Shown one piece after another: positions 1 through 63,990 of a stretch of 64,000 nt of DNA. Under the pieces are notes generated by a model. The model was not told the origin of the DNA and made no database searches. It saw only the letters and a program-made list of their open reading frames with translations. How positions within the stretch are numbered: position 1 is the stretch's first letter; the number at the start of each line of letters is the position of its first letter. The position numbers and the translations under genes were made by a program. This DNA comes from Perna viridis (taxonomy: Eukaryota), in the NCBI GenBank assembly GCA_037379345.1, contig CM074522.1, positions 5,890,001-5,954,000 on the forward strand, given 5' to 3'.

Positions 1-1627
1 TACCCTCCCTGGACAGCAAAGTGAACTGCCACATTACTAACATGTGTTCTGGGGTGCAGTGTTGTATTCAGAATGATATCATGCAGCGTACTCTGGAGTT
101 CTCCCTTGAACTGGATCCCTGTGAGAAGGCTCTCAGTATCAGTATAGAAAACACTCGCTACAACAGGACTTTGGATAGTACCTTTGTATATGGTAAGTTC
201 TTTGTTGTTTTTATACATTTCTGTTTCTCTTTTTTTTTTTGGTCAAGTTTAATTGTGAATTGTAATATGTGCTGTTTTTTTTTTTGGAAATTTTAAAACT
301 TTGTGCAATATATTTCAATATCCTCTTTGCTTATGGGAAGTAAAACTTATTTTTCAGGTGATGACCACTACTACAACTTACAGGGAATTGTTCGTATCAG
401 GTAAGGTATTTTGTAATTTTGTATTTTTGAAATTGATGATTTTCAAATATTTTTGCAAGTATTTTGAGCTCATGTTAAGCAGAAAGTTACCTTATTGTTA
501 GAACTATTAAAATGTGCATATTAGCAGGTACTTATTTTCATCAATAATAAGTGGGAAATTTGTGAAAATAAAAACACTGCGAAAACAATTTAATTGAAAT
601 TAGCCCTATCAATTGTTCCATTCAGTCACTGCATGTCACAATGTGACTGTATGGAACAATTAATAACTCTAATTTTATTTAGATTGACCGCAAAAAAAAT
701 TTATTACATCATGTACTTGTATTAAAGATGGAAGTTTCATCTGTTTTGATTTTACATAGTACTGTACACTGATTTTTTTTATGCTAAGTATAGTTATACT
801 TTTGTTCTTGTTTTGCAAACCCCAGTCTTCAGTGATATGTATTTATGTTTGCTCTTAGTTTCTGCTACCAGGAAACATGTATATCAGCGAAGTTGAAATT
901 AGAACAAACTCATGAAATAGAAATATACCATTACCTTTAAAATGATCATAGTACTTAAAATAATTGTTTTGGTTTTTTTTAGGTACAACATAGACAACCT
1001 GTATTATGACAGATTCTACCTTGTTAATGTTGTTGCCTTGTTCTGCTACGAGTCAACTGGAGTACAGTGTGCACCAGACAATACATTTACTATCCTGGAG
1101 AATGCCATGTTTCCCAAGAAAATCTGTGGATGGAATGAAGGCTACAGGATCACTAGTATGTTAAAATGAACAAGAATTTTTCTATAAGGGCAATGAGTAA
1201 TACCAGGCAGTAGCAGGTCCAGATGTGGGCAGGGGTTTAGGGCACAGGTTTAAAGAAGATTGACACACCCCTTTTTGTTGGAAAATTTTGGTAATTTTGT
1301 GCAAAATCAGGGCAAAAATTAGCAGGTAATGGCTAGGAACCCCATTCCAAGTCTTTGATCTAAACCTGCAAAATCATATTTTATGAGTCACTCATCCTTT
1401 TTTAAACCAAAAACATAAAAATAAGAACATTTTGATACAGATATGTCATTTTCATTTTTCAGATTTCTCAAGGTCAGCTTGGTATACAGACAATGGACTA
1501 CAACAAGGAGCTGTCCTGCCTGACTGGGCAGCTTCCTCCTTCCTCAATGACCTTCACCTTGCTGCTTACCTGCAGACCACACAATGTGGGCAGACATCAC
1601 TTATCTATAACAGTGGATGGAATATAG
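1..1627 (+). CDS. Exons 1-4: Cys-rich repeat 1 (5' truncated)
   Basis: VNCHITNMCSGVQCC...LDPCEK / 43-nt exon GDDHYYNLQGIVRIR / YNIDN...FCYES..QCAP...KICGWN / FSRSAW...TQCGQ..GWNI. Confidence 0.9.
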
Positions 1628-49600: not shown

Positions 49601-52600
49601 GACAGTTAAACTGTATATCTTAACAAATACTACTATTTTGGAAGTTTGGACCAGGGATGACAAAAAATATGAAAGAACCTAGGAGTTTAAATTCATATGT
49701 ATTGAGAGCATTTAAGGTTTTACCTTCCTCATGTTATTACCATAAAGTTTAGTAAGTACATGTATATTAGATTCAAAAACTGACCTGAGCACTGCAAAAC
49801 TAATTAACTTTTAGTCACTCAAGATCCATTGTAACTCAAATCAGAGTCATTAGATTTTATGACTTAATAACAGGGACAAATTCTTTTTAAGAGATTAGAC
49901 TAATTAAAAATAGATAATTTGCCTTCAATTATCTTTTCCTGGTGTCTTAAATGTGTTACACCGTTATGTAGGAGTCTGAGCCACTGACCGTTAAATTCAT
50001 CATCACCAACAAAGCAGGCCTATACATAACAGAAGAATCTGTTCCAGTACTAGTGGACCAAACACAGCCAAGTCCAGGAAAAGTCATTGATGGACATGAC
50101 TTTAAAACAGATAGAGTCTGGTTCAATTCACCAAGCCTTGTCAAAGGTAGGTACAAATTTATTTAACAAAATATATTCCTGAAATTTATAAAACTTGTAT
50201 TACAAAAATACAACATAGTAGTCATAATCTCACTATAGAGAGTGGTAGATTTAATGGTATATCCAGGGATAACAGAATTTGTACATTTTGTAATTTAAAT
50301 GATATAGAAGATGAGATGCATTTTATTCTCAAATGTCCAGTTTATCAAGGATTTAGAAACTTTTATTAAGCCTTACTATTGGAGAAGGCCATCTATGTTT
50401 AAATATATTCAGTTATTGAGTTCTAATAATGTAACAGAATTATGTAACATGAGAAAATTATATATTGTGAATAGTTTGTTGGTTGGTGTATTGTATTGGA
50501 GGGTACAAGTTTTTTTCTTTTCCCTGCTTTGGAGGAGGGGTATGATTGTTTTACCTACAGAATGACTTCTAACTTTCTCTGCAAACATTTGATATTTTGA
50601 CACAAAAATGCATTATAGAAAGATGGCTAAATATGTCCTTGAAAGAGTGCTAGACAGGAAATTAAATAGTCAGGGGATTAACATCCATAATGGAAAGAGT
50701 AATTAAGGGAACCAAGGTTATAGCGGTAATCAAAAGAATTTAATCCAGGGACAAAGACTAGACATGGCAAACAGACATGCGCAAAGAACATAGATTTGCA
50801 AAAGGAAATTGTGTATAGTAGTATGGTAGCTGTCGTTTTAAACAAAATGTGAAGTGAAATTCTTTTTTGTTTAGGTTCATTATTGCACCTTGCTACACCA
50901 TTTGGTCCGGCGTGTCCAAACCGTGCAATCTCACTTACCAATGACACAGGGTGGATGATACTTCAGCAGATAGGTTTCCGTGACCCAGCTGGGGCCAACT
51001 GGCCAATCAAAATGAGAACAGAGAATCTTGGTCAAGAAATTTACGATGATGAAATTTGGATCAAGATAGCTAAAGATACCAACTTAGATATGATATACTC
51101 GGGAGGTTATTATAGAAAAGCTGACTATGAGTTGGGAGGAGAGTGGCAGGTAATGGATTTTTTATGACTTATAGTACATGATTTTGTAGAGAACATTAGT
51201 AGTGGTTTTAGGGGTTAATTTGCATTTTTTCGATTAAATGCTCGTTAAGGGCTAAGTCAAATTTGATGAAATTCATTGGCATTCCTTATGTCAATGACTA
51301 AGACCATAGCCACAAAATTTGGAAATAGAAGTTAGAAAAGATACTTCCATATTTCTTTGGTCGCAAAAAGAGGTTTCATTCCAAGAATAAAGATTTCATT
51401 TATTGCACGTATACCTTTGTTATCATGTAGTTTCATGTAATTTACTGATCTTTCAATGTCACATTTCTTTTAGGCAACAATAAAAGCTGCAGCTGGTAAT
51501 GGATATGCTGCCACTTCGATGATGTTATGGGATGGACCACCAGATGGCATTATGCCATACAACTTTGTACCAGAGGCTGACTGGGCTTCAGATGTTTGTT
51601 ATTGCTGTTTTGAGAATCCTATCCCTGCTGTAAGTTTAGTTGTATTCAGCCCTAAGCGTTGAGAATCCTATCCCTATATTTACAGAGGGATTTCAATTTC
51701 CTCTGTCCTTCTCAATCACGAAATAATGTGAAAATTTGATTACTGCAAATATTTCTAGATATACAGAAGAGGATTCATTAAGCTGAAGGGGTATTTACAA
51801 AAATTAGATTAAAAAACAAAGGATTTCTCTTGAAAATCTGAAGTTTAAATTATTGCAATTCTGTTTAAATTTTTTCTACATTTATTATTGCAGTCATGTC
51901 CATGTAATTGTACAGACTATTTGGCTGGGAAGTTCGGTAATGGAACTATAGTAGTGCCATCTACACAAGCACCAGAAATCGTTGTCAATACAACATCATC
52001 ACCTTACAACATTGTAGAGAATCCAAAAGGTGGCGCTGTCACCTCTCCAATCGATCTGTCAAAACAACCAGCTAGGGCATCTTGTGGAATGGAAATTTTT
52101 GCTGGTTAGTTATGCATGGTCTATGTGTTGTTAAAAGAGTTTTCATGTCATGGAAGTTGGTTTACATGGATTATATTTATTATTCCTATAGCCTTGTTTA
52201 CAGTTAACATATCTGTCAAGAGTTTGTTTACTTACTGTGCCTACATAGCTGAAAAGAAGATACAAGTTTTTTGTTTAATTAATTCATTTTGGAAGTGTGA
52301 CATTGTTTTTGCCCTTGAAAATTTGAAATAAGTGCTCCATTTTTCATTGAATGTGGAGGTATAGAGACAAACTTTCAAAATTTATGATCATCCAAAGTTA
52401 TCTTTTACTGTATTTATTTTCTTTCAAAATTTCACACATATACTCTATCCAAAAACTATTCAGGCAAAACTTCATTGGAGTAAACCAGATATATTCCATT
52501 CCTTCTCTCCAGAATTGGAGAAAAGAATTGCATGAAATTTTGAGTTTTCATAATTCTGTCCACAAAAATTGTCTTGCTTGGCTTCCCTTAGCATTTAGCT

Positions 52601-55600
52601 ATATTTACAATCTCCCCCAGCCTGAAATCTTTATTCTGCTTCTGTTAATGAACTTGTGTATTTATAATTATAGGCCCTGACCCTCACATAGTAACTTGGT
52701 GTAGAGTGTTTAATGATACATTACCTCCACAAGCTGTTGAGGACATCCTAAACTTTGACCCGTCAGCTGATTACCACACCTACAAGATATCAGTAGGGCC
52801 AGAAGCAGATGATCCTGTCAATGTAAGTATTGCATTGATGATGATTTGTTGAAAGTGCAACAACCAAATGACAAACTAAGGGTGGCAATGTAGCCTGTAA
52901 TGTTTCTGAATTATCATGGGTTTTTAAACATGCATGAAGCACCTCCCGTCTGATTTTATATAGACTGCTACTTAAAATCTCAATATAAAGAACTCACATT
53001 ATGGAACTTTACTGATGTTGCTTTTTTTCAAAATTGCAAAAAAATTAAATGGACTATAATGATAAAATCAGATTAATCAACTCTTGCAATATTCTCTTAA
53101 TTGATAGTGCATAAGTGCAAGTATTTGTGGTTTATGTCAAACAATTAATTTTAAAGAATGAAATTAGTTGCTATTTCTGAATACAAAATACCAATCATAT
53201 ATAGAGCAAATTTTGATATGCTGTTCATGTGAAATGATGAGTTGAAGTCATTGTACAGGGAAACCTGTCTAAACCAAATCCTAAACAATCCAGGCACCTG
53301 TCTAAAACTAAATCCTAAACAATTCAGGCACCTGTCTAAACAAGACACTTTTTAAAGTCGCTTTTTATCAATTGTAATGTGTTTTGAACCTTGTTAAACC
53401 AAACACCTGTCTAAACCAACACATGTCTACCAGAGGTGTTTACTTGTACAGATTTTCCGTATTTTCTATTAATTTTGTCTGTACATTTGATAAAATTATA
53501 GAAAGTTCAGGATTTTATGGATCATTTCCATAGAAAACTGAAAAATATGGGTTGTCATCAATCAATATAAACAGATTTGGTCTACATCAAACACCTGTCT
53601 AACCAAACACCTGTCTAAACTGAACCTGACTAAACCAAACACCTGTCTACACCAAACCTGACTATACCAAACACCACTATAAACCGAACATGACTAAACC
53701 AAACACAACACCTGCCTAACCAAATACCTGTCTAAAACAAACACCTGTCTAAACCAAACACCTGTCTAAAACCAACACCTGTCTAAACTGAACCAACTTT
53801 TAAGTCCAAAAGAATTCAGTTTAAACAGGATTCACTGTATGTGAGTGAAGTTTTTAGGGGGCTAATTTCTTGTTTCTTTACTTTTTGCTAATAGGTATTG
53901 ATGCAGCTTCAATTATTTGTCATGAAGTATGAAAATAATTTTTTTTTTCCTTTTCAGCCCACATGGTGTTTCTATGTGTATGTAGATAATGTATTCTTCA
54001 GTAAAGTGTGTGGAATGAAACAACTGAGCACCGACACTAACCTTGTCTTCCATGTGTTCAATAAAAATAATATAATGCCACCAACGAACGACACATTCAA
54101 TCCATTCTCTACCAAAGCTTTCTTCAGGAATGTTATCCTCCCTCCAGCACCAGGAGCTTACTGTAGATATGGAGCCCCATTCCGAGGGGGAGAAAACCCT
54201 ATTGTAAAGTATGAGATTGGTATTGGTTCAACCTCTCTTGGAACTGAAGCGGTGCCATACCGAGAAATGATAACACCATGTTTGCCATGTTATAATTTCT
54301 GTTCGCGGTACAACTGTAATGCCACCTGTGATGCTGATTTACATGTCCTGTACCAGTTTGAGATGAAGGACTTCTATCTAAATGCAACCAGAAAGGAGGG
54401 CAATGAAACCCTTAGTGTTGATTATTATCTTACAGGTATTCTATATATATGTGTATATATAGAAAGGTCTGAAAAATTCCCAACGATGTAAGAACTGTCA
54501 AATTTGCTGGATTTTGTGCAGGCGGTGTTGCCATAGATGTCACAGTGGTACGAGTTTGAGTCCCGCAGAGGGAAGGACCAAAAGTTTGCATTGCAAATTT
54601 GACAGTTCTAACATCGTTGGGAATTTTTCAGACCTTTCTATACGTTTACATATCTTCCCTGTATCAATTTTTTTACTCCTCAGGTTTTATCCATTTCGTA
54701 GTGTAAATATTTTTTCCCCAGTGACCCACTCTTTTCTTTACATAATTTCATTAAACACCTTATAATGTTATTTGTGAAATTTTATGAAATCCTTTTAATT
54801 TTTTCAGGGTTTTTAAAACCTACTAAGACAAAACCTATGGAAAATCTAGATAATTTTTTTATATCTCAAAAACGAGCACATTGATCAATTTTTTTTTTTA
54901 TATTTACCTATAATTACCTATATGAAAGATCTCAATAGAATTTACAACCCTTTGAAATCCTTGTTATTCTGAAATAAAGTAGTGAACGTATTTAAATCAC
55001 GTTATTGTTGAATACAGTTAACAAAATACGTGTACATTAATTGTACCCATAATAAATCTGAGCCCTGTCTATACCAGACATTTTTCCTGTTATTTGTTTC
55101 AGTGTCATGTGAACCAATTTCAGACATTATTTTCTAACAGAATACGCTACTGTGAAAGTACTTGTATTCGTGGGTACCAATTTTTTTAGATTAAGAAACA
55201 ATTATCAGTTTGTAGATTGTTGAATTCGTGGATTTGACATCTCTATCATACAAATGAGAAATTTCCTCTTTGTTTGGAACCAAATTTCGAGGTTTACCAA
55301 ACCCACAAAAACCTCAAAAATTAGTTCCCCACGAATAATAATACTTTCACAGTATTTCAGATCTAGATTTTACAGTTATGTTTCTCTTTTTGCGGTTAAT
55401 TCATCAATTTCCACCATTGCTGTTTGAACTTGTCTTAACACAACAAAGCCTTGGGTCATAACTAGATTTGGTTGACAAGTTTTACTGTATCTACAATAAA
55501 ATTTTTACATCTCTTTATTTGTCCCATTTTAGTAAAAGCAGTATTAGGATCAGGAGCAACAGCTGTAGTATCATCTAATGGTTTTTATATTGATGAATCA

Positions 55601-58600
55601 CCACCTATCTATGATGGAGAAGCCATGACAGAAATTTACATTGATGTATCACAAGGGGCATTCACTCCTGTCAAATACCAAGCTTCCAACAGTACAATCA
55701 AAGCTTTCTGGAGGTGTTATGATGATGAAAGTGGTGTTGTGGTTAGTATTGGTTTGGATACAAATTGATTTAAGAGATGAATCCTTTTTTCATTTATAAG
55801 TATGTTCAAGTATTTATGATGTTTTTTTTTTAATTCAATGATCTGTCAATGATAAATTATGGTACACTACTGTCAAGTTGTTTCTCTATTCAATATTCCA
55901 TGTGTATCCGACTCAGACCTGGGAATTGCTCAAAAATCCTTTGAATAATTCTTATTACTGTCTTTGACACTGGGTTTTTTATGGGTATGAGGTCAGGATA
56001 CCTTATTGAAGTTCTGTGTCAGAGATTGTTCTACTTGAATAGCTCAAGATAAAGCAAGGAGACTATAATGAGGAATAGAATATTTATAATCTTGGAACAA
56101 AGACAGAACAAGTACACCATTAACTATAAAAAAAACATAGACAATAAAGATGAATGAGCAACTTGTACTTCGCTGAAAACTAGGAAAATTTGCCATGTGC
56201 ACTGGTAGGGTATTAAGAGTATGAATAGGTAGTAAAATATTCAAATCAGATTCTTCATTCAATGGCTCTTTGATATAATTTTACAGGAAAATTGGTGGGC
56301 TATAGGTCTGACAGTTGGAGGTACAGAACTTCAGGACTGGGAGTCAACTGGCACCAACCAAACAGCTATCAACAGTACATTAGAAGGGATCTTAGAACAT
56401 AATACAACATACTTTGTCTCGCTGCGGTGTGAAAATGGAGCAGGACGAATCTTAGAATACAATGATACTAAAGGTAAGTTATTTTAAAGATAATTAAGGT
56501 CAATTGAAAAAATAATTCTTTCCTGCACCTAAGTATACAATTTATGAGCAGTTTATAATGCAGCCAGATGTAAAATGAAGTATGGTAACAGAAAAAAAAC
56601 ATTTCATTTTTGGCCTTAAATTTATATATTAACATCTGGTAAGATAGATAAAAGATACTTACATGTACCTGAACCAATTCTTGCAGCTATAATTGCGATC
56701 AGTGACCAATGAGCGATAAATATATTTTACAGATTCCGTTTTTTTTAGTTTGTCAATTTTTATATGTATTAACTTACTGTAATAGATTTAAACATGAAAT
56801 AATTTCTCTTATTCAACATTTATTCTATTTTTAACAAAATACAATATGTGTATTTAATATTTTAAACTAAAGGTATACAGTCAAACCTCGATATGTCAAA
56901 CTCGGATTAGTCAAAATCTCGGATAACACGAACTAATTACAAAGTCCCAGCAAAACTCCCCTTACTCCAATACAATTTTACCTCGTATGACTCGAACTCT
57001 GATGAATTGAAACCTCAGATAACTCAAGGTAATCAATCAGTCCCCTCGATAGGACTTCAAGGTTAATTAACCCTGATGTCTCGAGGTCAAATAATTAGTC
57101 AGAAAACTGATTGATTTATTACAAAACATGATCGAAGTGTGTTTTAACAACAATCAGCGTGGCTTTTCAAATTGATTTGTTGACACTCATTATGGTTTGA
57201 TTTGTTTATTTAATTAATTTACAATTGCGCATGTTGTTTAAAGAAGCTAATTGTATTAATAACACCTAGGTATATACACTAACAATGATATCGGATATTT
57301 TGATAAAAAAAATACAGATGAATTGTAATGGTATCTAACTATTTAATGAAATATCAAAGAGACAATAGTAAGGGTATTTCAACGACTACATTTATTTCGC
57401 TAGTGAATTTGAAATTTTATCGTAATAATGTAGAGCACATGGTTTGACAATACTCCTGACTGTGAATCAAACAAAGCAGCATGTTATGAACTATGACGTT
57501 TTTGATGTAGAAAAAATAAAAAGGAAATTTCACTAAAACACTTGGTGCCCGTTCAGTATTTCAAACATGATATACAACATACAAAGAAAAAATATCTTCC
57601 GATATGAAACACAAGACATTACGAAGTACCGTGTAAAGTGAAGTACATGTACAAGCACAACAAATGATGTAAATACAGAAACAATCATTCACCAAACTAC
57701 TTGTATTTCGGGTTTATCCTCGACCTCGGATTACTTGAACCTTGGATAACTCGAATATTTTTGCATGGTCCCTTCGTCTTCAACTGTATTTAATATGGTA
57801 TTATTTTGGATTTGTTTTGATGGAAATTATCAAATTTACATGAACCGATCATATGTCAGTTTACATAACAAAACTGTTACCACATTTGTCACCGGTCAGT
57901 GGTTCTCCATCCATCAGGGATCAATCAGTCAGCATTCATCGATCCATCAAATAGTTGTGTGGATTGGCTCACAAACTGTATATATACCATGTAAACTTTA
58001 TAGGTTGTAATATTGAATCTGAACGGACATCTTAGTCTGTGATAGGATTCTGAATATTTTACTCTCTCATGAAGTTGAAGAAAATCTATACTAAATTTGT
58101 CAGCTTTGTCCTCAACATAAAACAAGCTTTTTAAACAGGAACCATAACTATGTATCAAATTGACAGGTGTCACTGTTCTACTGATTCCGCCTGTCGATGA
58201 TGTAAATGCCACTATTCCGGGAGCTGCTCCTTTATCTGCGGATGTGGAACCAAGTGATGCCCTTGCCAGTAATGATGGAAAAAAAATAGGAATCAGTTTT
58301 ACATTGAGTCATGATGAGTCCGTTAGACGATATGGTGAGAAAAATACTTATTAACTTTAAGATAAACAATTGTAATATTCTTGTGAGATCTGTCTGTTAC
58401 CAGAAATAAGGTAGCGCTTCAGATAGGTTACTGCTGAAAATAGATATTTCATTTTTTGGAAATGAACTACAGACTAGCAATTTCTTTTCTCTTGGTTTCC
58501 TTAACTCTACATCTTCTACTCGAGTGTAAATGGGTCATGATTCAAAACTTATTTTTTGTGAAGAGTAATTAAAGTTTGTTATTTTATAAGGAGTACATAA

Positions 58601-61600
58601 AAGTTGTTATTTTTACTAAAAAATGTTTTGTTCTGATGCATAAGACTTTAGCAATGAATAACCTAATATATTTTTTTTTCAAGAATTTAAAATATGGTTG
58701 AAAATTCAGGCCAAAAGTTGATATTATACCTGTTAACATTTGGAACTGTTAATATGGGAGATTCTCCCTCATTTACACTGTCTCATGTGGAAAATTTTTT
58801 AAGTAAAAGCAAATTTTTATGTAAAAGTTCTATTATTTAATATTTTACATAGAAAACATATAATTTAAACCCAAAGCCTCCCACAAATCTTACATATTTT
58901 TATGGGAGAGTCTGATTTTTTTAATTTATTTTGGGGGAGTTAGCAGGTATGGATACTATTATTACATACTATTTCTATCTCACATTTGACAAATCTATTA
59001 CAGACTTGTGTATAGGAACAGATGAATTCATGGATGATATTTTCCCTTGCACATGGGTTGCCTACAACAGATCAGGTGTCATTATGATAGAGAATGGTTG
59101 GATCACATTGGATGGAATCCAAATTCGACGTTTATCAGAATTCAATCCAAGTAATGCTGGCATGTCCATGGAGTATAGAAATAACAACTCTAACAATGTA
59201 TTCAGCATGGAGCCTGGACGAACATTGTTTATGTCAATGAGGTTATGTAACGAGGCTGAGCTATGTACAAACAAATCAATGGGCAGTGTCATAATAACAA
59301 GTAGTAATACTGACCTGGAAACATCATTGGATGGTCAGGCTATCACAATATCTGTCACTGGAGCAGGGAATGGAAGAAAGAAAAGAGCTGTTGGGACATG
59401 CAGTGGTCTGAATATTCTAACACCTAATAGTAAGTTTTATCTGTAGGTTATGATGGTTGAAATATTCACCTTTTTTCACATTTTTTACATTTTGTTTTTA
59501 TATTTTTTTTTAACAGTACCAAATAAGTTCATAGAAAACAACCTATGTTGTCCAACCAAAGGGCTTGTTACAAATAAAATTTAATTATTTCATGATAGCT
59601 GGAATAAAGTAGTCAGTGCATTAAAAAAAAAACAGAGATAGGCATAAGGGATGTTAAACCTATTCCCATCTAGCAGCACAATATATTTTATAGGTTTGTA
59701 ATTACTATACATCAACACAGCGGAATGGAATGCGGATAATTGGAAAAATAATTTAAATGCTTTGGTATACAAACCAGTTCAGTGTACAGCATTGTTTTGT
59801 TTTTGGAATTCTGATGGATGGATTTCGATCTTTATAGTAAAACTAATCAATGTGAAATGCCTTTGATATGTAGACAATTAATAAAATATTAAAGCACCAT
59901 TTTGAAAGATCAGTCTAAATTCATTTTGTTCTTCCAAATACCAATGTTTTGTTCAGAATATAAAAACAAAGGAGACAATTTACGACTGGTATGAAAATAA
60001 AGACATAATGGGTTTATAGCTGGAATTTAAGTGATACTTGGTGAATATCTGCATTTTCAAATCCTTATTTCACCTTCATGATTCTTCAACCACATATCCA
60101 AGTATTTCCTTTCAGACAAAATTTCTTTACTGCTTAAAAACTGAATTCCTCTTTTTAAGATAATGCCTGTACTTTTGATTTTGCCTATCTCCAATTGCCT
60201 GCCATTCCTCAAATATAGTCTGTGAGTTTAGAATTTATAAACAGTTTATACCCTAATTATCTGATTATTGTATCTCTCTCTTTAGATTTGACAATTGGAC
60301 AGAGTGTTACCTATACAGAACTGACACAGAATGAGATCACGGCAACGTATGCCTCAGCTGCGTCTCCAGATTTTGTTCCCTACATTGTTGATCCTGCTAC
60401 CACAACAGACTTAGTGGACAGAGTCTTACATAGAAGGTAATGGTCATGCTTACATCAGACTAGAATCGCTTCAACTTTTTTAGCATACATAGCCCAAAGG
60501 CTATTTAATTTTTATTCAGTAATATTTTAGGTAATGAATTTTCCTATTGTGAAGTAAGATTCATTATGGTTAATCAAAAAAAAAAAATCTCATAAAGTTA
60601 ACTATTTGTTAATGTACATTGTTTGCATATGAATGAATATTGAACACATGCATCCTTATGGGTTATTTTATATGTAGATTGTATGGAAGCAGTGACTGTG
60701 TCTTTTCTCTTGTGTCAGTGGGTCATATTATAATGCCTGGGCCAGTATTAATGACCTATCTTGACTCTGCTGGTCCAGGACCACATGAACAGGGCAATAG
60801 GACTCTTCTTACACACTGGAATCCAGGTAAATCATCTGAAATTTACATTGTTAGTAAATTTTTATGTTTTTTCATGGGTATCAATTTTTTATGTTTTTTC
60901 ATGGGTATCAATTTTTTATGTTTTTTCATGGGTATCAATTTTTTATGTTTTTTCATGGGTATCAATTTTTCGTCATTTTCATATTTCTCTGTTAAATTTA
61001 TTTTTTTAAATTCAAGGATTCATTAGAGCTTCACAGTTTTCAATGAAAAAGTTTCCATATTTTGGGGAATTGGAACTTTTGCTTACACTAAACTGTGAAA
61101 AAAGTTGTTCCTCAAGAAAAATTGTTATTTCCCAGCTGACTGTAATTAATCCCTGAATTTGTTAATTGTTAGCATGGTTTAAGCTGACTGCTTAAGTAAC
61201 AAGTAAGTTGATATTTTTTAGGAATTATGAATAATTGTGCTTATTTTACCTTTGGAAATATTACAGATACTTAAAACAATATTTGAAAATGGTAATTCTA
61301 TGAAATCCTATGACAAGCTGAAACAAAGCATCAAATAATTTTTACATTACAGTGCGACAAGTATGGGAGATGACAAGTATGTCATGTGAAAACGAGACCG
61401 ACACCGAGGTTTTCCATGCTGATGGTACTGTCACTGTTAAGGTAAGTTTTCTCCTTCCTAGTTTTAGGTCACATGACATCAGACTTGGATTTAATTGGTT
61501 AATCAGTGTAATTTTCATTACTAGAAGTCCGACAGAAATAGAAATCCTTCCTGGTAAATTCTTATTCTGAACTTGTGTTCAATGTAAGTTAATGCAACCT

Positions 61601-63838
61601 CATTAATAACAATTTATTAAACATTCTTCAAATATTAACCCTTTAAACACATCATGATTACCATATTAACTCTTTAACACATCATGATTACCATATTAAC
61701 TCTTTAACACATCATGATTACCATATTAACTCTTTAAACACATCATGATTACCATATTAACTCTTTAACACATCATGATTACCATATTAACCCTTTAAAC
61801 ACATCATGATTACCATATTAACTCTTTAACACATCATGATTACCATATTAACTCTTTAAACACATCGTGATTACCATATTAACTCTTTAAACACATCATG
61901 ATTACCATATTACTTCAGGTTTGCAATACATGGAAGGATATTACAGAGGGTGCTGTGAATGATTTGTACTTCCGACATGAGACAATGTTCTCTCTAGCAA
62001 ATGCCGCTGCTTCAGTTATTAACTCTGTACCAAGACTAGATGTTCCCAGTATGGTTTATATGGCAGAGGACTCTGGTGAGTTGCCACTCATTTTATTACT
62101 GTATAACAGGTTTACCTTTCTTTGTTTTTAAAGTTTTGTTTTTATACAATCAAACCTGCATATGAAGGTCACCTTTGGGACAAAGGAAATGCGACCTCTA
62201 AATTCCAGTAGTAAAAATTGATTTACAAAGGAATTGTTGCTATATTCCAACCTTTTGTTACTTTCCCTCAGTTCATAAGAGGAGGCCAAATATTCATCCA
62301 AAATTTCTGAGTAACACCTTTATGTTTAACTTCTTTTAAGTAGCAGTCTTTTGAAAAATCAGACAGAAGGTGATTTATGCATATCAAAAACCCACTGAAT
62401 TCAATTTTATTTCTTGTTCAGAAACAGTTACTGATCACATAACCAGTCTTAGTTTTTCATTTGGTTGTTGTGCTTTGAGATAAAAGTTATATAGATTGTA
62501 CATGAAATTCATACTTTGCAAGAGTTATTGTTCTTGATTTGGTTTCATTTGGTTGATTTTAGTGGGAAGAGAATGTATGATTTTCTAAAAAGTGCAAATC
62601 TGAATGCAGAAATGACTATTGTTATGTGAAAGTATAGCATATTTAGACTGAAAAAGCATTGTTTGTTTGGTGGGTTTTTCTTCACCATAAATCACTTTAC
62701 CATTGATAGTGTCTGAATTTTATGTGGACTGGTACTTAACAGAAAAAAAATAAGGATGGCTTAATCTTGATCCAGTGAAAACTGTCTTAACCAGTCAGAT
62801 TTTGTTACACATATGTGAGCATAGTACCTAAACTAAACAAACCCCTTACTGTAGTTGGAAAAAGGACCATGTTTATACCAGTTTTACTGTGTCTAATCTT
62901 TTTAAACAAAATTAAGTTAGGAAACCTATGAAAGTTATTTGATATATGATACCTTGATTAAGTCATATGAGGTTTCATTTCTAACTATGTATGTTATAGG
63001 TACCATCCAGTATCAGTTAGTGGCAGTAGATGATGAAGGAGACACTATAGAATTTTACCTTGACTCAAACTTCACAGATTATAACTTAGGAACTCCAATC
63101 CTGTCTAAAGATGGAATGTAAGTTGATGTGTTAATGAGATCATTCTTAGTTTCCCTAATCAATCAATTCAGTAATAGAAATCCATAAAATTATCAGGTTC
63201 TCCAAATGCTGACATAAGGTTTTCTGTTCAAAAAGGTATTATCTCATTTAAACATCAACACCTTAGAATGGACGTTGGTTTGTTTTATTAGCTTGGTAGC
63301 ATGTGACTTTGAACCCTGGGTCTTATTGATACATTTTGCATTTTAACAAACCTTTATGCTAAGAGTATTCAGTCTTAGAACACATGTAATAGCTTTTAAG
63401 TATTGTTACAATTGCTAAAGATGGAAGTGATTCAAGAGCTTGGGTCAGCAAAAAATGTAAGATAACATTAAAAAATCAATCATAAGTTTTTCATCAGATT
63501 GCAAATACATGTTTCAATTCAGGGTACCTAATGTTTTTTCATCAACTTTAAATCTTTCAACTAGAGTAATTAAATTTGAAGTTATAATGTACTTGGAATA
63601 ACATTTTTAATCACCTGATTTGTTTTCCAGTTTACTATACACACCTTGTGAAAACTGTGTTGGCATGGAAACCATTCCAATCATCTTAGTAGAGGTACAG
63701 ACAGATCCACTTATACCACCAAACAATGTCACAGTTTACATAACAGTTAATATTACTGACAATATAGATCCTCCAGTCATCTTCTTGTCTTTGTTGGGAG
63801 ACTCCATATTACCTCCAGATCCTACAGAACCAGTGGTG
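1..63838 (+). CDS. Giant multi-exon extracellular mosaic protein, partial at both ends (~4,730 aa in window): Cys-rich repeats / Cys-free beta module / FN3-like array with PAN and GH16-like inserts / ZU5-GPS-like / cadherin-like
   Basis: Hand-spliced join, all GT-AG, phases consistent, first codon at nt 3: 1-192,358-400,983-1155,1463-1627,1856-2065,2362-2404,2838-3001,3382-3564,4211-4387,4587-4629,5138-5301,5726-5896,6666-6881,7141-7183,7697-7863,8383-8565,8931-9189,9728-9897,10619-10789,11104-11322,11528-11570,12163-12326,12834-12899,13232-13441,14368-14581,15107-15209,15497-15647,16208-16425,17338-17497,18564-18789,19600-19834,24042-24230,24525-24837,25620-26033,29055-29181,29563-29657,30223-30408,31362-31542,32078-32244,32394-32521,33278-33530,33829-34000,34685-34928,35379-35496,35794-35972,36412-36571,37072-37269,37883-38122,38685-38844,39208-39449,39970-40100,40524-40677,41871-42092,42522-42615,42904-43027,43359-43507,44177-44310,45330-45602,46169-46459,47009-47160,47605-47746,48109-48212,48746-48949,49972-50146,50875-51149,51474-51629,51894-52104,52674-52822,53958-54435,55533-55741,56287-56473,58167-58334,59004-59429,60286-60436,60678-60826,61353-61441,61919-62075,63000-63117,63631-63838. 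Many N-x-S/T sequons and conserved Cys patterns indicate a secretory-pathway protein. Confidence 0.9.
1856..3564 (+). CDS. Exons 5-8: Cys-rich repeat 2
   Basis: Exons of 210/43/164/183 nt; CIKS...TKCHLTAGCTAVECC...IDPCTN; same intron phases (1,2,1,1) as the other repeats. Confidence 0.9.
4211..5896 (+). CDS. Exons 9-12: Cys-rich repeat 3 (first acceptor uncertain)
   Basis: LDCFLSSDYTTIECC...VDPCEF / 43 nt / 164 nt / 171 nt; the nearest in-frame AG is at 4209-4210. Confidence 0.8.
6666..8565 (+). CDS. Exons 13-16: Cys-rich repeat 4
   Basis: Exons of 216/43/167/183 nt; CENV...MKCNIDFECQKISCC...IDPCKG. Confidence 0.9.
8931..10789 (+). CDS. Exons 17-19: Cys-rich repeat 5 (A and B exons fused)
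   Basis: Exons of 259 (=216+43)/170/171 nt; CTSS...IVCSIPTECNGARCC...IDTCGN...YGSSDALSIYGFATLR. Confidence 0.9.
9330..9450. repeat. Degenerate ~31-bp tandem repeat x4
   Basis: catggaaa..cccttgt.tatctaga.agt units. Confidence 0.7.
11104..12899 (+). CDS. Exons 20-23: Cys-rich repeat 6 (short D exon)
   Basis: Exons of 219/43/164/66 nt; CGNV...IACHIGTSCHNVECC...METCSY. Confidence 0.88.
11774..12002 (+). mobile_element. Non-autonomous interspersed repeat family A, most complete copy
   Basis: cttaccctaccagtgcacctggtc...ataaccttggttcccttgattactct; near-identical reverse copies at 15956, 43681 and 50696, degenerate ones at ~43085 and ~56070. Confidence 0.85.
13232..14581 (+). CDS. Exons 24-25: Cys-rich repeat 7 ending in polybasic RRRRRR
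   Basis: CIGV...TRCRMAADCHSVECC...IDNCND / fused B+C exon ...QACYISPGTCEDY...KTCSGRRRRRRAVAT; RRRRRR at 14550-14567. Confidence 0.88.
13493..13878. mobile_element. MITE-like element with ~24-bp TIRs, rich in CATATG
   Basis: 5' cacagccaaatttgccacatatga; 3' tcatatgtggcactttctgccatg (reverse complement catggcagaaagtgccacatatga). Confidence 0.75.
14582..14770. repeat. 20-bp degenerate minisatellite x~9 starting at the exon 25 donor
   Basis: ttcagtttctatttatagtg units. Confidence 0.8.
15107..19834 (+). CDS. Exons 26-31: Cys-free helical + amphipathic beta-strand module ending in RKKR
   Basis: Helical-looking LGAKLLGDKLANMTIGDIESLL...QLMKDMRDLAKAL, then alternating hydrophobic strands MKFYVGAKV, VTVYGELGIG, GKLRLEGRI, LKLTPIKLTLYALVTLEVNI; RKKR at 19823-19834 ends the exon. 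Confidence 0.88.
15956..16160 (-). mobile_element. Interspersed repeat family A copy
   Basis: agagtaatcaagggaaccaaggttatagcgg...ccaggtgcactggtaggg, the reverse complement of 11774-12002. Confidence 0.85.
22930..23082. mobile_element. Small hairpin MITE
   Basis: ggggattacaggatttctccact / agtggagaattcctgtaatcccc inverted arms, with outer agattc...gaatct. Confidence 0.7.
24042..59429 (+). CDS. Exons 32-73: array of ~19 FN3-like modules with inserted domains, ending near RKKR (59375-59386)
   Basis: Recurring consensus D.(T/S)PP..G.V.DG...D....W.GF.D.ESGI..Y.V.(V/I)GT..GG.DV..W...L..G..YY.TV.A.N.AG.....S.G..VD. The FN3 fold call rests on the W and YY.TV.A.N..G signature. Confidence 0.8.
25655..25876 (+). 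other. PAN/apple-like domain (4-Cys type) inside exon 34
   Basis: GDCAKRCADMIKTKCMSFNYDFLNATCELL...LYQHYER matches the PAN signature CxxxC....C.SF.Y....C.L.....Y.R. Confidence 0.85.
26400..28174. repeat. 33-bp minisatellite, ~54 copies, in intron 34; 3 more copies at 28770-28869
   Basis: Unit cttttgatatgctgtagggtaagccatataggc with a small set of recurring variants. Confidence 0.97.
31559..31716. mobile_element. Palindromic MITE (GGCC-type termini); relatives at ~12390 and ~34042
   Basis: ggcctggtttcataa ... ttatgaaaaccggtcc, with internal ttcctcaaat/atttgagg inverted arms around tgattgg. Confidence 0.75.
32563..32958. mobile_element. TTAA-flanked non-autonomous DNA transposon (Kolobok-like)
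   Basis: ttaa|gtagc ... gctac|ttaa with long imperfect inverted arms (ctacatatttttatttt / aaaataaaaatatgtag); related ends at ~47803, ~52970 and ~62337. Confidence 0.7.
37290..37600. repeat. Degenerate ~26-bp tandem repeat
   Basis: aatggtttcacatttt/agttgtc units. Confidence 0.7.
38397..38636. repeat. 48-bp perfect tandem repeat x5
   Basis: aagtaaacagatctattgttatgtcataaccttcatacttcaagttat. Confidence 0.95.
38824..39068. repeat. 49-bp tandem repeat x5 spanning the exon 49 donor
   Basis: acctgaagtcactattgacag|gtatggttgatttagtaatagaaagttt. Confidence 0.95.
40729..41487. repeat. 39-41-bp minisatellite x~19
   Basis: (t)6-8 atcagt(a/t)tatagccagggttc(a/g)ttccatagagc. Confidence 0.95.
42327..42478. 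repeat. 30-bp tandem repeat x5
   Basis: ttacctcccttcaatgtcgtctctgtggcc, progressively degenerate. Confidence 0.85.
43681..43985 (-). mobile_element. Interspersed repeat family A copy with the 38-bp terminal unit present x4
   Basis: agagtaatcaa(a/g)ggaaccaaggttatagcggtaatcaa x4 (43681-43832), then the family body. Confidence 0.85.
44950..45280 (+). mobile_element. tRNA-derived SINE (V-domain-like core) with (CAAT)n tail
   Basis: B-box-like ggattcaaacc, core caccaaagactttaaaattggta, 3' gttaaaccataatcaatcaatc. Confidence 0.65.
50696..50792 (-). mobile_element. Interspersed repeat family A, partial copy
   Basis: agagtaattaagggaaccaaggttatagcggtaatcaaaagaatttaatccagggacaaagac. Confidence 0.8.
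50875..54150 (+). other. GH16 (glucanase/ConA-like) domain, non-catalytic, exons 65-69
   Basis: YSGGYY...GEWQATIKAAAGNGYAATSMMLWDGPPDG ... SCGMEIFAG ... FDPSADYHTYKI ... FYVYVDN ... NLVFHVFN: the ordered GH16 motifs. Confidence 0.7.
53256..53837. mobile_element. TA-flanked Tc1/mariner-type MITE(s) with internal aaacacctgtctaaacc repeats
   Basis: ta|cagggaaacctgtctaaac ... gtttaaacaggattcactg|ta; relative at ~12920-13070. Confidence 0.7.
54458..54642. mobile_element. Hairpin element with ~50-bp near-perfect inverted arms
   Basis: tatagaaaggtctgaaaaattcccaacgatgtaagaactgtcaaatttgc / gcaaatttgacagttctaacatcgttgggaatttttcagacctttctata. Confidence 0.85.
55148..55354. mobile_element. TA-flanked MITE
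   Basis: tactgtgaaagtacttgtattcgtggg ... cccacgaataataatactttcacagta. Confidence 0.85.
56878..57786. mobile_element. Non-autonomous Tc1/mariner-pogo-type element
   Basis: ta|cagtcaaacctcgata ... caactg|ta, with subterminal ctcggataactcgaa repeats at both ends and no transposase ORF. Confidence 0.75.
60286..62075 (+). CDS. Exons 74-77: ZU5/GPS-like segment
   Basis: FSLVSVG..MPGPVLMTY...LLTHWNPVRQVWE...SCEN...DGTVTVKVC...RHETMFSLA. Exons are secure; the domain call is tentative. Confidence 0.6.
60858..60970. repeat. 27-bp tandem repeat x4
   Basis: aattttttatgttttttcatgggtatc. Confidence 0.9.
61633..61911. repeat. 29-30-bp minisatellite x~9.5 abutting the exon 77 acceptor
   Basis: taa(a)cacatcatgattaccatattaactctt. 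Confidence 0.95.
62020..63838 (+). CDS. Exons 77-79: cadherin-like / bacterial Ig-like module
   Basis: NSVP....MAEDSG...AVDDEGDTIEF...DGILLYTPCENCVG.E...VYITVNITDNIDPPVI: E-D, DxDxD-like and D/N..PP Ca-binding-type motifs. Confidence 0.7.
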
Positions 63839-63874
63839 GTAAGTTATGTCCCTTTCTTGAATTATCTTCCTTGA

Positions 63875-63990
63875 CATTCATTATAGAACCCATGCCATCT
63901 CTTGTCTCTTTTGGGAGACTCAATATTACCTCCAGATCTAAAGGAACCAGTTGTGGTAAGTTGTACCCATTTGTTAAATTATCTCCCTTA
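63875..63990 (+). repeat. Tandem duplicate of the exon 79 3' end and donor
   Basis: ttgggagactcaatattacctccagatctaaaggaaccagttgtg|gtaagtt versus the original ttgggagactccatattacctccagatcctacagaaccagtggtg|gtaagtt. Confidence 0.9.

What the first reader, a model, noticed from the sequence alone, without database searches (positions are those of the whole stretch)
1..63838. Giant (>4,700 aa) convertase-segmented extracellular polyprotein: candidate glycan-sensing/effector system
Seen: 79 phase-consistent exons form one open frame, with three polybasic sites (RRRRRR 14550-14567, RKKR 19823-19834, RKKR 59375-59386) sitting exactly at domain boundaries. Established: R-X-K/R-R is the furin/proprotein convertase consensus. 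Cleavage would give pieces of >=1,279 aa (Cys repeats), 369 aa (Cys-free), 2,777 aa (FN3 rod with PAN and GH16-like inserts) and >=305 aa (ZU5/GPS-like plus cadherin-like). Inference: a single-gene, multi-subunit assembly that displays carbohydrate-binding domains on a long rod and sheds a membrane-active fragment. I do not recognise this architecture as a named gene.
Basis: partly seen in the sequence, partly recalled or inferred. Interest (0 to 1): 0.85.

Follow-up and report, generated by a model that had tools for sequence, protein, structure and literature searches.

The report
Giant furin-segmented lipoprotein-headed membrane protein gene
The window holds the last 40% of one roughly 168-kb bivalve gene for a membrane-anchored surface protein of about 12,000 residues, from an unstudied family shared by molluscs, worms, echinoderms and amphioxus, in which conserved furin-type cutting sites sit between the main building blocks.

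Summary
An independent splice-aware model gives 79-82 phase-compatible + strand exons in the window. The pieces come out at 1,280, 369 (no cysteine), about 2,950 and at least 323 aa.

It starts about 100 kb upstream with a signal peptide and ends 4 kb downstream after two EGF domains, a membrane helix and a tail. That makes about 217 exons and about 12,000 aa.

The unseen N-terminus matches homologues that carry a vitellogenin/apolipophorin-type lipid-transfer domain, an M23-like domain and a SAP domain. About 34 Cys repeats follow it.

- **Sites:** all three are conserved as multibasic sites in bivalves and a gastropod. Sites 2 and 3 are also basic in amphioxus; site 1 varies there.
- **Supported domains:** PAN by Pfam; the GH16 fold (Z 20.5, no catalytic motif) and the cadherin-like domains (Z about 11) by models of homologues.
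- **Not supported:** ZU5/GPS membership, and a "membrane-active" shed fragment.
- **Status:** no characterised relative and no paper were found. The scan had already noted a paralogue elsewhere in this genome (s1-774370). No RNA evidence could be obtained.

The parts
1..14549 (+). The last 7 of about 34 tandem Cys repeats, each about 200 aa with 10 Cys. Each is a 4-exon cassette that includes a 43-nt exon. The last unit is truncated.
   Evidence: Exon model. 43-nt exons at 358, 2362, 4587, 7141 and 11528. The repeats continue upstream to window coordinate -63041. All 100 genome matches to one repeat exon lie in four paralogous loci. No Pfam hit.
14550..14567 (+). Site 1: RRRRRR, directly after the last Cys of the repeat array (KTCSG-RRRRRR-AVATE).
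   Evidence: A strict multibasic motif sits at the same aligned place in all 14 mollusc homologues aligned, and HRYKR in one Branchiostoma lanceolatum protein.
14568..19822 (+). Cys-free module: 6 exons, 369 aa including the RKKR, no cysteine. A helical-looking first half is followed by runs of alternating hydrophobic residues.
   Evidence: 59% identical to Haliotis over exon 18564-18789, and still 37% to amphioxus. No Pfam, PDB-sequence or Atlas relative.
19823..19834 (+). Site 2: RKKR, the last four codons of the exon.
   Evidence: A basic site (RXXR, or at least K/R-R) sits at this aligned place in 18 of 21 homologues, 5-10 residues before an invariant Cys.
19835..24041 (+). Phase-0 intron of 4,207 nt with a canonical donor (GTATGA) and acceptor (pyrimidine tract, then TAG).
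   Evidence: Homologue proteins are continuous across it: P0005 residues 424-516 then 518-580, and P0072 residues 3949-4011 then 4033-4093.
24042..24847 (+). Conserved 'C-x-V-x-Q-L-x-x-R-D-Y-T-E-P-A-F' domain that follows site 2.
   Evidence: The fold was not determined.
25598..26033 (+). PAN/apple domain exon.
   Evidence: Pfam PF00024, 27.3 bits against a cut-off of 21.4. Also found in the Anneissia homologue.
29055..50146 (+). Rod of FN3-like beta-sandwich repeats with recurring 'VD-x-T-P-P' and 'W-x-x-F-x-D-x-E-S-G-I' motifs.
   Evidence: Motif counts. Pfam fn3 hits on homologues. Foldseek matches to contactin FN1-FN3 and titin for the homologue model.
50875..54435 (+). GH16-fold (beta-jelly-roll) domain inserted in the rod, itself interrupted by a Cys-rich, Thr/Pro-rich loop. 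No ExDx(x)E catalytic motif.
   Evidence: AF2 model of the Ptychodera homologue P0053: residues 141-466 align to Bacillus lichenases at Z 20.5, rmsd 2.8 A, 200 of 213 residues. Mapped to these exons through P0005. Motif search.
55533..59374 (+). The last FN3-like repeats and the beta-sandwich domain that ends at site 3.
   Evidence: High-confidence beta domain in the Mytilus homologue model, residues 18-175.
59375..59386 (+). Site 3: RKKR.
   Evidence: A multibasic motif ending in K/R-R (RRKR, RKKR, KQKR, KYKR) in Mytilus, Solemya, Potamilus, Sinanodonta, Ruditapes, Mya and Haliotis, in one B. lanceolatum protein, and in the three paralogues of this genome. It lies in a loop of pLDDT below 50 between confident strands in the Mytilus model.
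59387..62075 (+). Juxta-cleavage domain with a GPS-like W..W..C...V-x-V-C-x-T ... E-T-x-F pattern. The window gene lacks the extra RxRR ('site 4') that many homologues have here.
   Evidence: No GPS, GAIN or ZU5 Pfam hit at E<=1 in seven homologues.
63000..63838 (+). The first cadherin-like domain, with the linker motif TDNIDPPV. The gene continues beyond the window.
   Evidence: Pfam Big_9, Cadherin_4 and Cadherin_5 on homologues. Model residues 358-615 align to tandem cadherin EC domains at Z 10-11. Downstream exons.

Best explanation
The window is the 3' 40% of one gene for a giant type-I membrane glycoprotein of about 12,000 aa, with about 217 exons over about 168 kb at G000:C12:5,790,064-5,958,143.

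Domain order:
- signal peptide;
- a lipoprotein-type lipid-transfer (LLTP, vitellogenin/apolipophorin) head with an internal RRKR site;
- a stretch that looks like amphipathic helices;
- an M23-like domain, then a SAP-like motif;
- about 34 Cys repeats, then site 1;
- the 369-aa Cys-free module, then site 2;
- a PAN domain;
- a long rod of FN3-like repeats (not counted exactly) carrying a non-catalytic GH16-fold domain, then site 3;
- a GPS-like domain, cadherin-like domains, two EGF domains, the membrane helix, and a Ser/Pro-rich tail of about 150-170 aa.

Shown here: the gene structure, the domain content, and the conservation and loop position of the multibasic motifs.

Inferred: furin-type proprotein convertases cut the precursor in the secretory pathway into about five chains. 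Insect apolipophorin-II/I is cut this way inside its lipid-transfer module. By analogy with known furin-processed surface proteins, the chains then stay together at least transiently. The result would be a very long surface filament that presents a lipid-binding head and lectin-like domains on a membrane-anchored stalk. What it binds, and whether the Cys-free piece is released, are unknown.
For: One gene:
- Haliotis cracherodii XP_071111769.1 (P0072, 7,526 aa) is colinear from residue 35 to 7342 with window coordinates -99,876 to +66,144.
- There is a start codon with a signal peptide at -99,936.
- The EGF and membrane-helix exon is at +65,912 to +66,221, and the tail exon runs to a stop at about +68,143.

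LLTP head:
- The first 1,445 aa of P0072 align end to end with amphioxus and Owenia homologues (E 6e-168 and 2e-124).
- Those homologues carry Pfam Vitellogenin_N above its cut-off (27.9 and 25.0 bits against 24) and Peptidase_M23 (E 2e-5).
- Haliotis rubra carries SAP (28.8 bits).

Cleavage sites:
- The window holds three sites where composition predicts 0.32. All three are conserved.
- The N-terminal site lies at about residue 621, against 624 in Haliotis and 622 in amphioxus.
- Furin cleavage at RX(R/K)R at about residue 725 of the lipid-transfer module is established for apolipophorin-II/I and apolipocrustacein (PMC1783640).
- Site 3 lies in a low-confidence loop between confident beta strands.

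Domains: PAN, GH16 fold, cadherin-like, EGF.

Family: four giant paralogues in this genome share the same order of parts.
Against: - There is no transcript evidence for this genome.
- My exon chain enforces phase, and about 2 kb of it is weakly supported.
- The LLTP, M23 and SAP assignments rest on homologues. This gene's own exons, scanned one by one, gave only a weak M23 hint (E 0.11), and the whole-genome Vitellogenin_N scan did not list this locus.
- Some public models of the family are split into shorter proteins.
- Cleavage is predicted, not observed.
- Site 2 is degenerate in some homologues.
- The structural evidence comes from models of Mytilus and Ptychodera homologues, not of this protein.
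- Whether the chains stay associated is analogy only. The complex test gave no verdict.
Confidence: 0.7

Rival explanations
1. One reading: a secreted polyprotein or effector system. Convertase cleavage would release the Cys-free 369-aa piece as a soluble lipid-binding or pore-forming effector, while the rod displays glycan sensors.
For: - The module is bracketed by two conserved basic sites. It has no cysteine, so it cannot be disulfide-tethered.
- It is the best-conserved part of this region.
- Its second half has alternating hydrophobic residues.
- A GH16 fold without a catalytic motif, as in invertebrate glucan-recognition proteins, and a PAN domain sit on the rod.
Against: - The protein is membrane-anchored, not free.
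- No similarity to any pore-former or lipid-binding family was found.
- Alternating hydrophobicity is common to any beta sandwich.
- Site 2 is weak or missing in some homologues, and site 1 is missing in Owenia and some amphioxus proteins.
- There is no expression or immune-challenge data.
Confidence: 0.12
2. Two or more neighbouring genes, for example a secreted LLTP/Cys-repeat gene and a separate membrane FN3-cadherin gene, that only look like one because gene predictors and my chain join them.
For: - Several database models are partial. Potamilus P0005 starts in the last Cys repeat, Haliotis rubra P0090 holds only the front part, and H. rufescens is split into several LOCs.
- There is no RNA evidence here.
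Against: - Models that carry both the LLTP head and the C-terminal domains exist in three phyla: Haliotis, Owenia and Branchiostoma.
- The module-to-next-domain junction is continuous in all 21 aligned proteins.
- No start codon with a signal peptide and no stop appears at the supposed break.
- All four paralogues keep the same order and spacing.
Confidence: 0.08
3. The basic motifs are not cleavage sites. They would be charged linkers, for example glycosaminoglycan- or membrane-binding patches, kept for another reason.
For: No cleavage has been observed. The exact sequence varies, and some homologues keep only two basic residues.
Against: - Their form is the convertase consensus, usually followed by Ser, Ala or Asp.
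- They sit in loops between domains.
- They recur at five or six homologous places across phyla.
- One of them sits at about the same distance from the N-terminus (about residue 621) as the proven furin site of apolipophorin-II/I (about residue 725), in the lipid-transfer module.
Confidence: 0.1

Closest known systems
Large lipid transfer proteins of the apoB/apolipophorin-II/I/apolipocrustacein type
   Same: N-terminal Vitellogenin_N-type module, shown on homologues. An RX(K/R)R convertase site about 620 residues from the N-terminus, just after the helical part of the module, compares with residue ~725 in apolipophorin-II/I and apolipocrustacein (PMC1783640).
   Different: Known members are soluble lipoproteins of 1,500-4,500 aa, with DUF1081 and/or VWD domains and no membrane anchor. 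This protein adds about 34 Cys repeats, PAN, an FN3-like rod, a GH16 fold, cadherin-like and EGF domains and a membrane helix. No DUF1081 or VWD was detected.
Furin-processed giant adhesion receptors (Notch S1, FAT cadherins, LRP1) and GAIN/GPS-cleaved adhesion GPCRs
   Same: Single-pass or membrane-anchored giants with cadherin and EGF domains. They are cut in the secretory pathway in a loop of a juxtamembrane beta domain, and the chains stay non-covalently joined (the last point is from my own knowledge).
   Different: No sequence or profile membership. The cut here would be by a convertase at several places, not by autoproteolysis. There is no 7TM domain and no NRR or LNR.
Invertebrate beta-1,3-glucan recognition proteins (GNBP/LGBP) with inactive GH16 domains
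   Same: A GH16 beta-jelly-roll fold lacking the ExDx(x)E catalytic motif.
   Different: Those are small secreted proteins. Here the domain is one insert in a 12,000-aa membrane protein and is split by a Cys-rich/Thr-Pro loop. Glycan binding is untested.
Uncharacterised predicted proteins of other invertebrates (such as Haliotis cracherodii XP_071111769.1, Potamilus KAK3612515.1, Branchiostoma XP_078620548.1 and Owenia 'Vitellogenin'), and the paralogue noted by this scan (s1-774370)
   Same: True homologues with the same order of parts, 40-54% identical over the window's exons.
   Different: None has a described function. The number of Cys repeats varies from one in amphioxus to dozens in bivalves.

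Membership tests
[quoted passage not shown] | N-terminal lipoprotein domain (Pfam Vitellogenin_N / LPD_N) | tested here: inconclusive
   Above the cut-off on amphioxus homologues (27.9 and 25.0 bits against 24), and recorded for Owenia. Those N-termini align end to end with Haliotis P0072, which is colinear with this gene's upstream exons. This gene's own exons, scanned singly, gave no hit. The joined protein was not scanned.
[quoted passage not shown] | Convertase site RX(K/R)R inside the lipid-transfer module (apoLp-II/I type) | tested here: met
   RRKR at window coordinate -82,681, about residue 621. Haliotis has RDKR at 624 and Branchiostoma RLKR at 622, each followed by a conserved 'SVDW..MIGS..GAAFGL' block. 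Equivalence to motifs N19/N20 of the literature was not tested.
[quoted passage not shown] | Binds and carries lipid | not testable with these tools
   Needs biochemistry.
Proprotein-convertase (furin) substrates | R-X-K/R-R motif in the lumenal part | tested here: met
   Motifs at 14550-14567, 19823-19834 and 59375-59386, where composition predicts 0.32.
Proprotein-convertase (furin) substrates | Motif conserved in orthologues and exposed | tested here: met
   Alignment of 21 homologues and of this genome's paralogues. Site 3 lies in a loop of pLDDT below 50 flanked by confident strands. Exposure of sites 1 and 2 was not modelled.
Proprotein-convertase (furin) substrates | Actual cleavage | not testable with these tools
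   Needs proteomics or expression with and without furin.
Glycoside hydrolase family 16 | Beta-jelly-roll fold of GH16 | tested here: met
   Z 20.5, rmsd 2.8 A, 200 of 213 residues of 3o5s/1gbg, on the model of homologue P0053.
Glycoside hydrolase family 16 | Catalytic ExDx(x)E motif | tested here: not met
   No such motif in window exons 50875-54435, nor in the Potamilus or Haliotis orthologues. One EVDGE occurs in the Ptychodera homologue only.
PAN/apple domain | Pfam PF00024 above its cut-off | tested here: met
   27.3 bits against 21.4 on window:25568-26053.
Cadherin-like domains | Cadherin fold and Asp/Asn-rich linker motif | tested here: met
   Z 10-11 to tandem EC domains, and 94-99 residues at rmsd 2.3-2.8 A for one domain. 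Big_9, Cadherin_4 and Cadherin_5 hits. The linker is 'NDPP' in homologues and TDNIDPPV in the window. It is not a classical cadherin (no Pfam PF00028 hit).
GAIN/GPS or ZU5 domain | Profile match and HL|T autoproteolysis motif | tested here: not met
   No GPS, GAIN or ZU5 hit at E<=1 in seven homologues covering the region, and no HLT. Only a W-x6-W-x5-C ... V-x-V-C-x-T ... E-T-x-F-A pattern resembles GPS. The fold of this sub-domain was not searched on its own.
Fibronectin type III | Pfam fn3 or FN3 fold | tested here: inconclusive
   fn3 passes its cut-off for only one or two repeats per homologue. Foldseek matches FN3 arrays. No window exon hit fn3 on its own.

The most novel reading that the evidence does not exclude
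The gene encodes a new kind of membrane-tethered lipoprotein machine kept by non-vertebrate bilaterians. A convertase-cut precursor would have a lipid-transfer head and Cys-repeat chain, a disulfide-free 369-aa connecting module, and a lectin-bearing rod, which separate on demand. That would release either a giant lipoprotein-like particle or the Cys-free module as a signalling or membrane-active factor.
Probability: 0.13. Interest if true: 0.85.

Novelty: new variant of a known kind. Interest (0 to 1): 0.6.

Why it matters
Lipid-transfer (vitellogenin/apoB-type) modules are known only from soluble lipoproteins. Here one sits on a 12,000-residue membrane-anchored stalk. The family is conserved from molluscs and annelids to echinoderms, hemichordates and amphioxus, yet it has no name, no paper and no known function.

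The conserved convertase sites give concrete, testable predictions: defined neo-N-termini and defined chains. They also give natural boundaries for expressing the unknown domains, namely the Cys repeat and the Cys-free module.

The gene also shows how one domain can expand from one copy to about 34 copies within a conserved framework. It would be one of the largest animal proteins if transcribed as modelled.

Tried and rejected
- **RNA evidence:** No runs were available.
- **Joined spliced protein:** Window and flank exons went in one by one by reference, so whole-domain Pfam, fold or Atlas searches of this gene's own multi-exon domains could not be done.
- **Pfam on 30 single exons**: only PAN and a weak M23 hint.
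- **PDB sequence searches** with P0005 and with a 6-sequence profile: EGF only.
- **Larger profiles for the Cys-free module** (A4, A5, A6): these exceeded the 6,000-column limit of the PDB search, so it was not run.
- **Atlas:** On one 74-aa exon it gave only unnamed clusters at 0.90, which is not informative.
- **Complex prediction** of the Cys-free module with the following domains (Potamilus residues 143-516 with 517-821): no verdict, score 0.00, and the partner's own fold was uncertain. This is no evidence either way.
- **Whole-genome Vitellogenin_N scan**: it listed ordinary vitellogenin/apolipophorin loci and two weak hits near the C9 paralogues, but not this locus.
- **Fused-exon search:** I looked in paralogues for a fused-exon copy of the module to fold. 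They have the same introns.
- **Three literature searches**: nothing on the family.
- **Interchain disulfide idea:** I considered a disulfide between the Cys just before site 1 and the Cys just after site 2. I dropped it, because the latter Cys has a conserved likely partner within its own domain (invariant C522 and nearly invariant C607 of P0005).
Full report
**1. What is in the window.**
The window is AT-rich (32-37% GC) and has no gaps. The + strand carries many short open stretches whose translations look like extracellular protein domains.

It uses GT-AG sites, an in-frame codon log-odds score, splice-site matrices retrained on homology-supported exons, and a bonus for tblastn matches to 11 homologous proteins. 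It gives 82 exons and 15.0 kb of coding sequence in the window. Three are doubtful: a 12-nt exon, a 52-nt exon, and a 69-nt duplicate of an exon end.

The chain enforces phase compatibility, so phase consistency is not proof on its own. The independent support is colinear homology. The Potamilus protein P0005 and the Haliotis protein P0072 each match about 50 window exons, in order and on the same strand.

**2. The three motifs.**
- RRRRRR is at 14550-14567.
- RKKR is at 19823-19834, the last four codons before a GTATGA donor. The next exon starts at 24042 behind a pyrimidine tract and TAG, phase 0/0.
- RKKR is at 59375-59386.

The pieces between them are 1,279.7 aa, 369.0 aa, 2,950-2,971 aa and 323 aa (to 63838) in my model. 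The 369-aa piece has no cysteine.

From the composition of the window model, 0.32 R-X-[KR]-R motifs are expected. In my ~12,000-aa model of the whole gene the motif occurs at only five lumenal places in well-supported exons.

**3. The gene is much larger than the window.**
The window is G000:C12:5,890,001-5,954,000. I fetched 140 kb upstream and 40 kb downstream.

- **Upstream:** the Cys repeats continue to window coordinate -63,041. Haliotis cracherodii XP_071111769.1 (7,526 aa) is colinear from its residue 35 to 7342 with window coordinates -99,876 to +66,144. An ATG followed by a typical signal peptide (MDHPWSLCGLFLVLQLFLV...) opens the first exon at -99,936.
- **Downstream:** an exon at +65,912 to +66,221 encodes two EGF-like domains, a 22-residue hydrophobic helix and RWKRRE. 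Further exons give a Ser/Pro-rich tail that ends at a stop near +68,143.

The model has about 217 exons and about 37.6 kb of coding sequence, of which 2.0 kb is weakly supported. That is roughly 12,000 aa over 168 kb. The joined protein was never sent to a search tool. All searches of this gene were made exon by exon by reference.

**4. Relatives.**
A phmmer scan with the site-3 exon found 70 proteins, and a second search with the Cys-free module found 19. All are predicted proteins that are either 'uncharacterised' or named automatically. They come from:
- bivalves: Mytilus, Pinctada, Potamilus, Sinanodonta, Solemya, Ruditapes, Mya;
- a gastropod: Haliotis;
- a nemertean: Lineus;
- an annelid: Owenia;
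- echinoderms: Anneissia, Acanthaster;
- hemichordates: Saccoglossus, Ptychodera, Glandiceps;
- amphioxus.

No vertebrate or arthropod protein appeared, but these lists are not exhaustive. The closest relatives are only 52-54% identical (Mytilus, Pinctada), so the species itself is not represented.

Three literature searches found nothing on the family. This genome has four giant paralogues with the same order of parts: this gene, C12:23.92-24.09 Mb, C12:28.90-29.06 Mb and C4:8.88-9.02 Mb. Two more distant copies lie on C9. All 100 genomic matches to a Cys-repeat exon fall in the four giant loci.

**5. The unseen N-terminus.**
The upstream exons read like a lipoprotein N-terminal module. Pfam finds Vitellogenin_N above its cut-off in two amphioxus homologues (27.9 and 25.0 bits against 24), and it is on record for Owenia. 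Peptidase_M23 appears in amphioxus (E 2e-5, below its cut-off), and SAP in Haliotis rubra (28.8 bits).

The first 1,445 residues of Haliotis P0072, which map onto this gene's upstream exons, align end to end with those amphioxus and Owenia N-termini (E 6e-168 and 2e-124). This gene's own exons, scanned singly, gave only a weak M23 hint (E 0.11). The LLTP assignment for this gene is therefore by transitive homology.

In amphioxus a single Cys repeat lies between the SAP-like motif and the Cys-free module. In this bivalve there are about 34.

**6. Are the basic sites real processing sites?**
- **Site 1:** a strict multibasic motif directly after the last Cys in all 14 mollusc proteins aligned, and HRYKR in one amphioxus protein. 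It is absent in Owenia and some other amphioxus proteins.
- **Site 2:** RXXR, or at least K/R-R, in 18 of 21 proteins. It always lies 5-10 residues before an invariant Cys that opens the 'RDYTEPAF' domain. It is degenerate in Solemya (one copy), Ruditapes and Potamilus copy 3.
- **Site 3:** multibasic in all aligned molluscs with this region, in one B. lanceolatum protein, and in all three paralogues of this genome. Other amphioxus proteins and Saccoglossus have only RSAR, KR or RR.

Two further conserved sites exist. One lies at about residue 621 in the lipid-transfer module: RRKR here, RDKR at 624 in Haliotis, and RLKR at 622 in amphioxus. The other, an RRRR-type site about 150 residues after site 3, is present in Haliotis, Solemya, amphioxus and Anneissia but missing in this gene.

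Furin cleavage at RX(R/K)R at about residue 725 of the lipid-transfer module is established for insect apolipophorin-II/I and crustacean apolipocrustacein (PMC1783640).

In an AlphaFold2 model of the Mytilus C-terminal homologue P0071 (mean pLDDT 70, above 85 over most of residues 10-720), site 3 lies in an eight-residue loop with pLDDT below 50, between confident strands.

Taken together, the motifs look like convertase sites that have been under selection. Cleavage itself was not observed.

**7.
- **PAN:** confirmed by Pfam on the window exon.
- **GH16-like:** a model of the Ptychodera homologue P0053 (mean pLDDT 74) aligns over residues 141-466 to Bacillus lichenases at Z 20.5, rmsd 2.8 A, 200 of 213 residues. 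Dozens of GH16 enzymes score above Z 17. This region maps to window 50,875-54,435. No ExDx(x)E motif is present in the window exons or in mollusc orthologues. It is therefore a GH16 fold that is probably not an enzyme.
- **Cadherin-like:** model residues 358-615 match tandem cadherin EC domains at Z 10-11. Big_9, Cadherin_4 and Cadherin_5 hit in homologues.
- **FN3 rod:** supported at the level of fold and weak Pfam hits.
- **ZU5/GPS-like:** no profile hit even at E<=1 in seven homologues. A Trp/Cys pattern followed by 'ETQFA' recalls the GPS motif. The extra furin site of other species sits where the autoproteolytic cut would be. This is a resemblance, not a membership.
- **Cys repeat and Cys-free module:** no relative in Pfam, PDB sequences or the Atlas.

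**8. How it most likely works.**

*Shown:* a single-pass membrane protein gene with a lipoprotein-type head, a very long array of Cys repeats, a conserved Cys-free module, a lectin-bearing FN3-like rod and a cadherin/EGF stalk, with conserved multibasic loops between the blocks.

*Inferred:* convertases cut the precursor in the late secretory pathway into about five chains:
- an N-terminal piece of about 620 aa;
- about 7,850 aa holding the rest of the head plus the Cys repeats;
- the 369-aa module;
- the rod of about 2,950 aa;
- a membrane stub of about 735 aa.

By analogy with apolipophorin-II/I and with furin-processed receptors, the chains probably stay together at first. Because the module has no cysteine, everything N-terminal of site 2 can be held only non-covalently after cleavage, so shedding is a real possibility.

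I put one gene at about 0.9 and cleavage at some of the sites at about 0.75. Retention versus release of the module is about even. Lipid binding by the head is about 0.5, and glycan binding by the GH16 fold about 0.4. A complex prediction for the module with its neighbour gave no verdict.

**9. Novelty and earlier notes.**
The family exists in databases only as unnamed predictions. A lipid-transfer module on a membrane-anchored stalk is not among described LLTP architectures, as far as my searches and knowledge go.

The scan had already noted a family member on another piece of this genome (s1-774370, seen, after I had reached the same reading). It had also noted the GH16-like insert, the Cys-free module and the Cys repeat of this window.

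What this report adds:
- the full extent of this gene;
- the conservation of the cleavage sites across phyla;
- the fold-level confirmation of the GH16 and cadherin-like domains;
- the finding that there are four giant paralogues and two more distant copies, not one gene.

Noticed in passing
window 38824-39068: Five tandem copies (49 bp, 97% alike) of the last 20 bases of an exon plus its GT donor and the first 27 intron bases. The same donor site is therefore present five times in a row. The period is not a multiple of three.
   Followed up: partly
window 63778-63989: A 117-bp tandem duplication copies the end of the cadherin-like exon (…LGDSILPPDPTEPVV, then the GT donor) into the intron. 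This creates a second in-frame pseudo-exon end at 63887-63955.
   Followed up: partly
window 26396-28173, 40730-41487 and 38396-38637: Large intronic minisatellites: 33 bp x 54 copies, which gives spurious ORFs of more than 500 aa on both strands; 40 bp x 19 copies; and a perfect 48 bp x 5 copies.
   Followed up: no
window 50151-50366 (+): An intronic open stretch reading …SGRFNGISRDNRICTFCNLNDIEDEMHFILKCPVYQ…, which looks like the tail of a retroelement protein.
   Followed up: no
upstream flank, window coordinates -80481 to -79741 (G000:C12:5,809,519-5,810,259): A tandem repeat that stays open in frame (SSWDPEREGLHYIPQHTIG…) and was pulled into my exon chain with a score near zero. It is probably intronic.
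   Followed up: no
G000:C9:34,607,810-34,621,760 (+) and C9:34,720,424-34,743,096 (-): Two more distant, head-to-head family members. A Vitellogenin_N-like exon lies only 14-22 kb from the Cys-free-module exon, so these copies appear to have few Cys repeats, as in amphioxus.
   Followed up: partly
upstream flank, window coordinates about -28385 to -27888, -19072 to -18695 and -6375 to -5998: In some Cys repeats two exons of the 4-exon cassette are fused into one open frame. This points to intron loss within the array.
   Followed up: no
P0053 (Ptychodera flava) residue 354: The hemichordate homologue has EVDGE at roughly the position of the GH16 catalytic strand, unlike the mollusc proteins. 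Residual enzyme activity there cannot be excluded.
   Followed up: no
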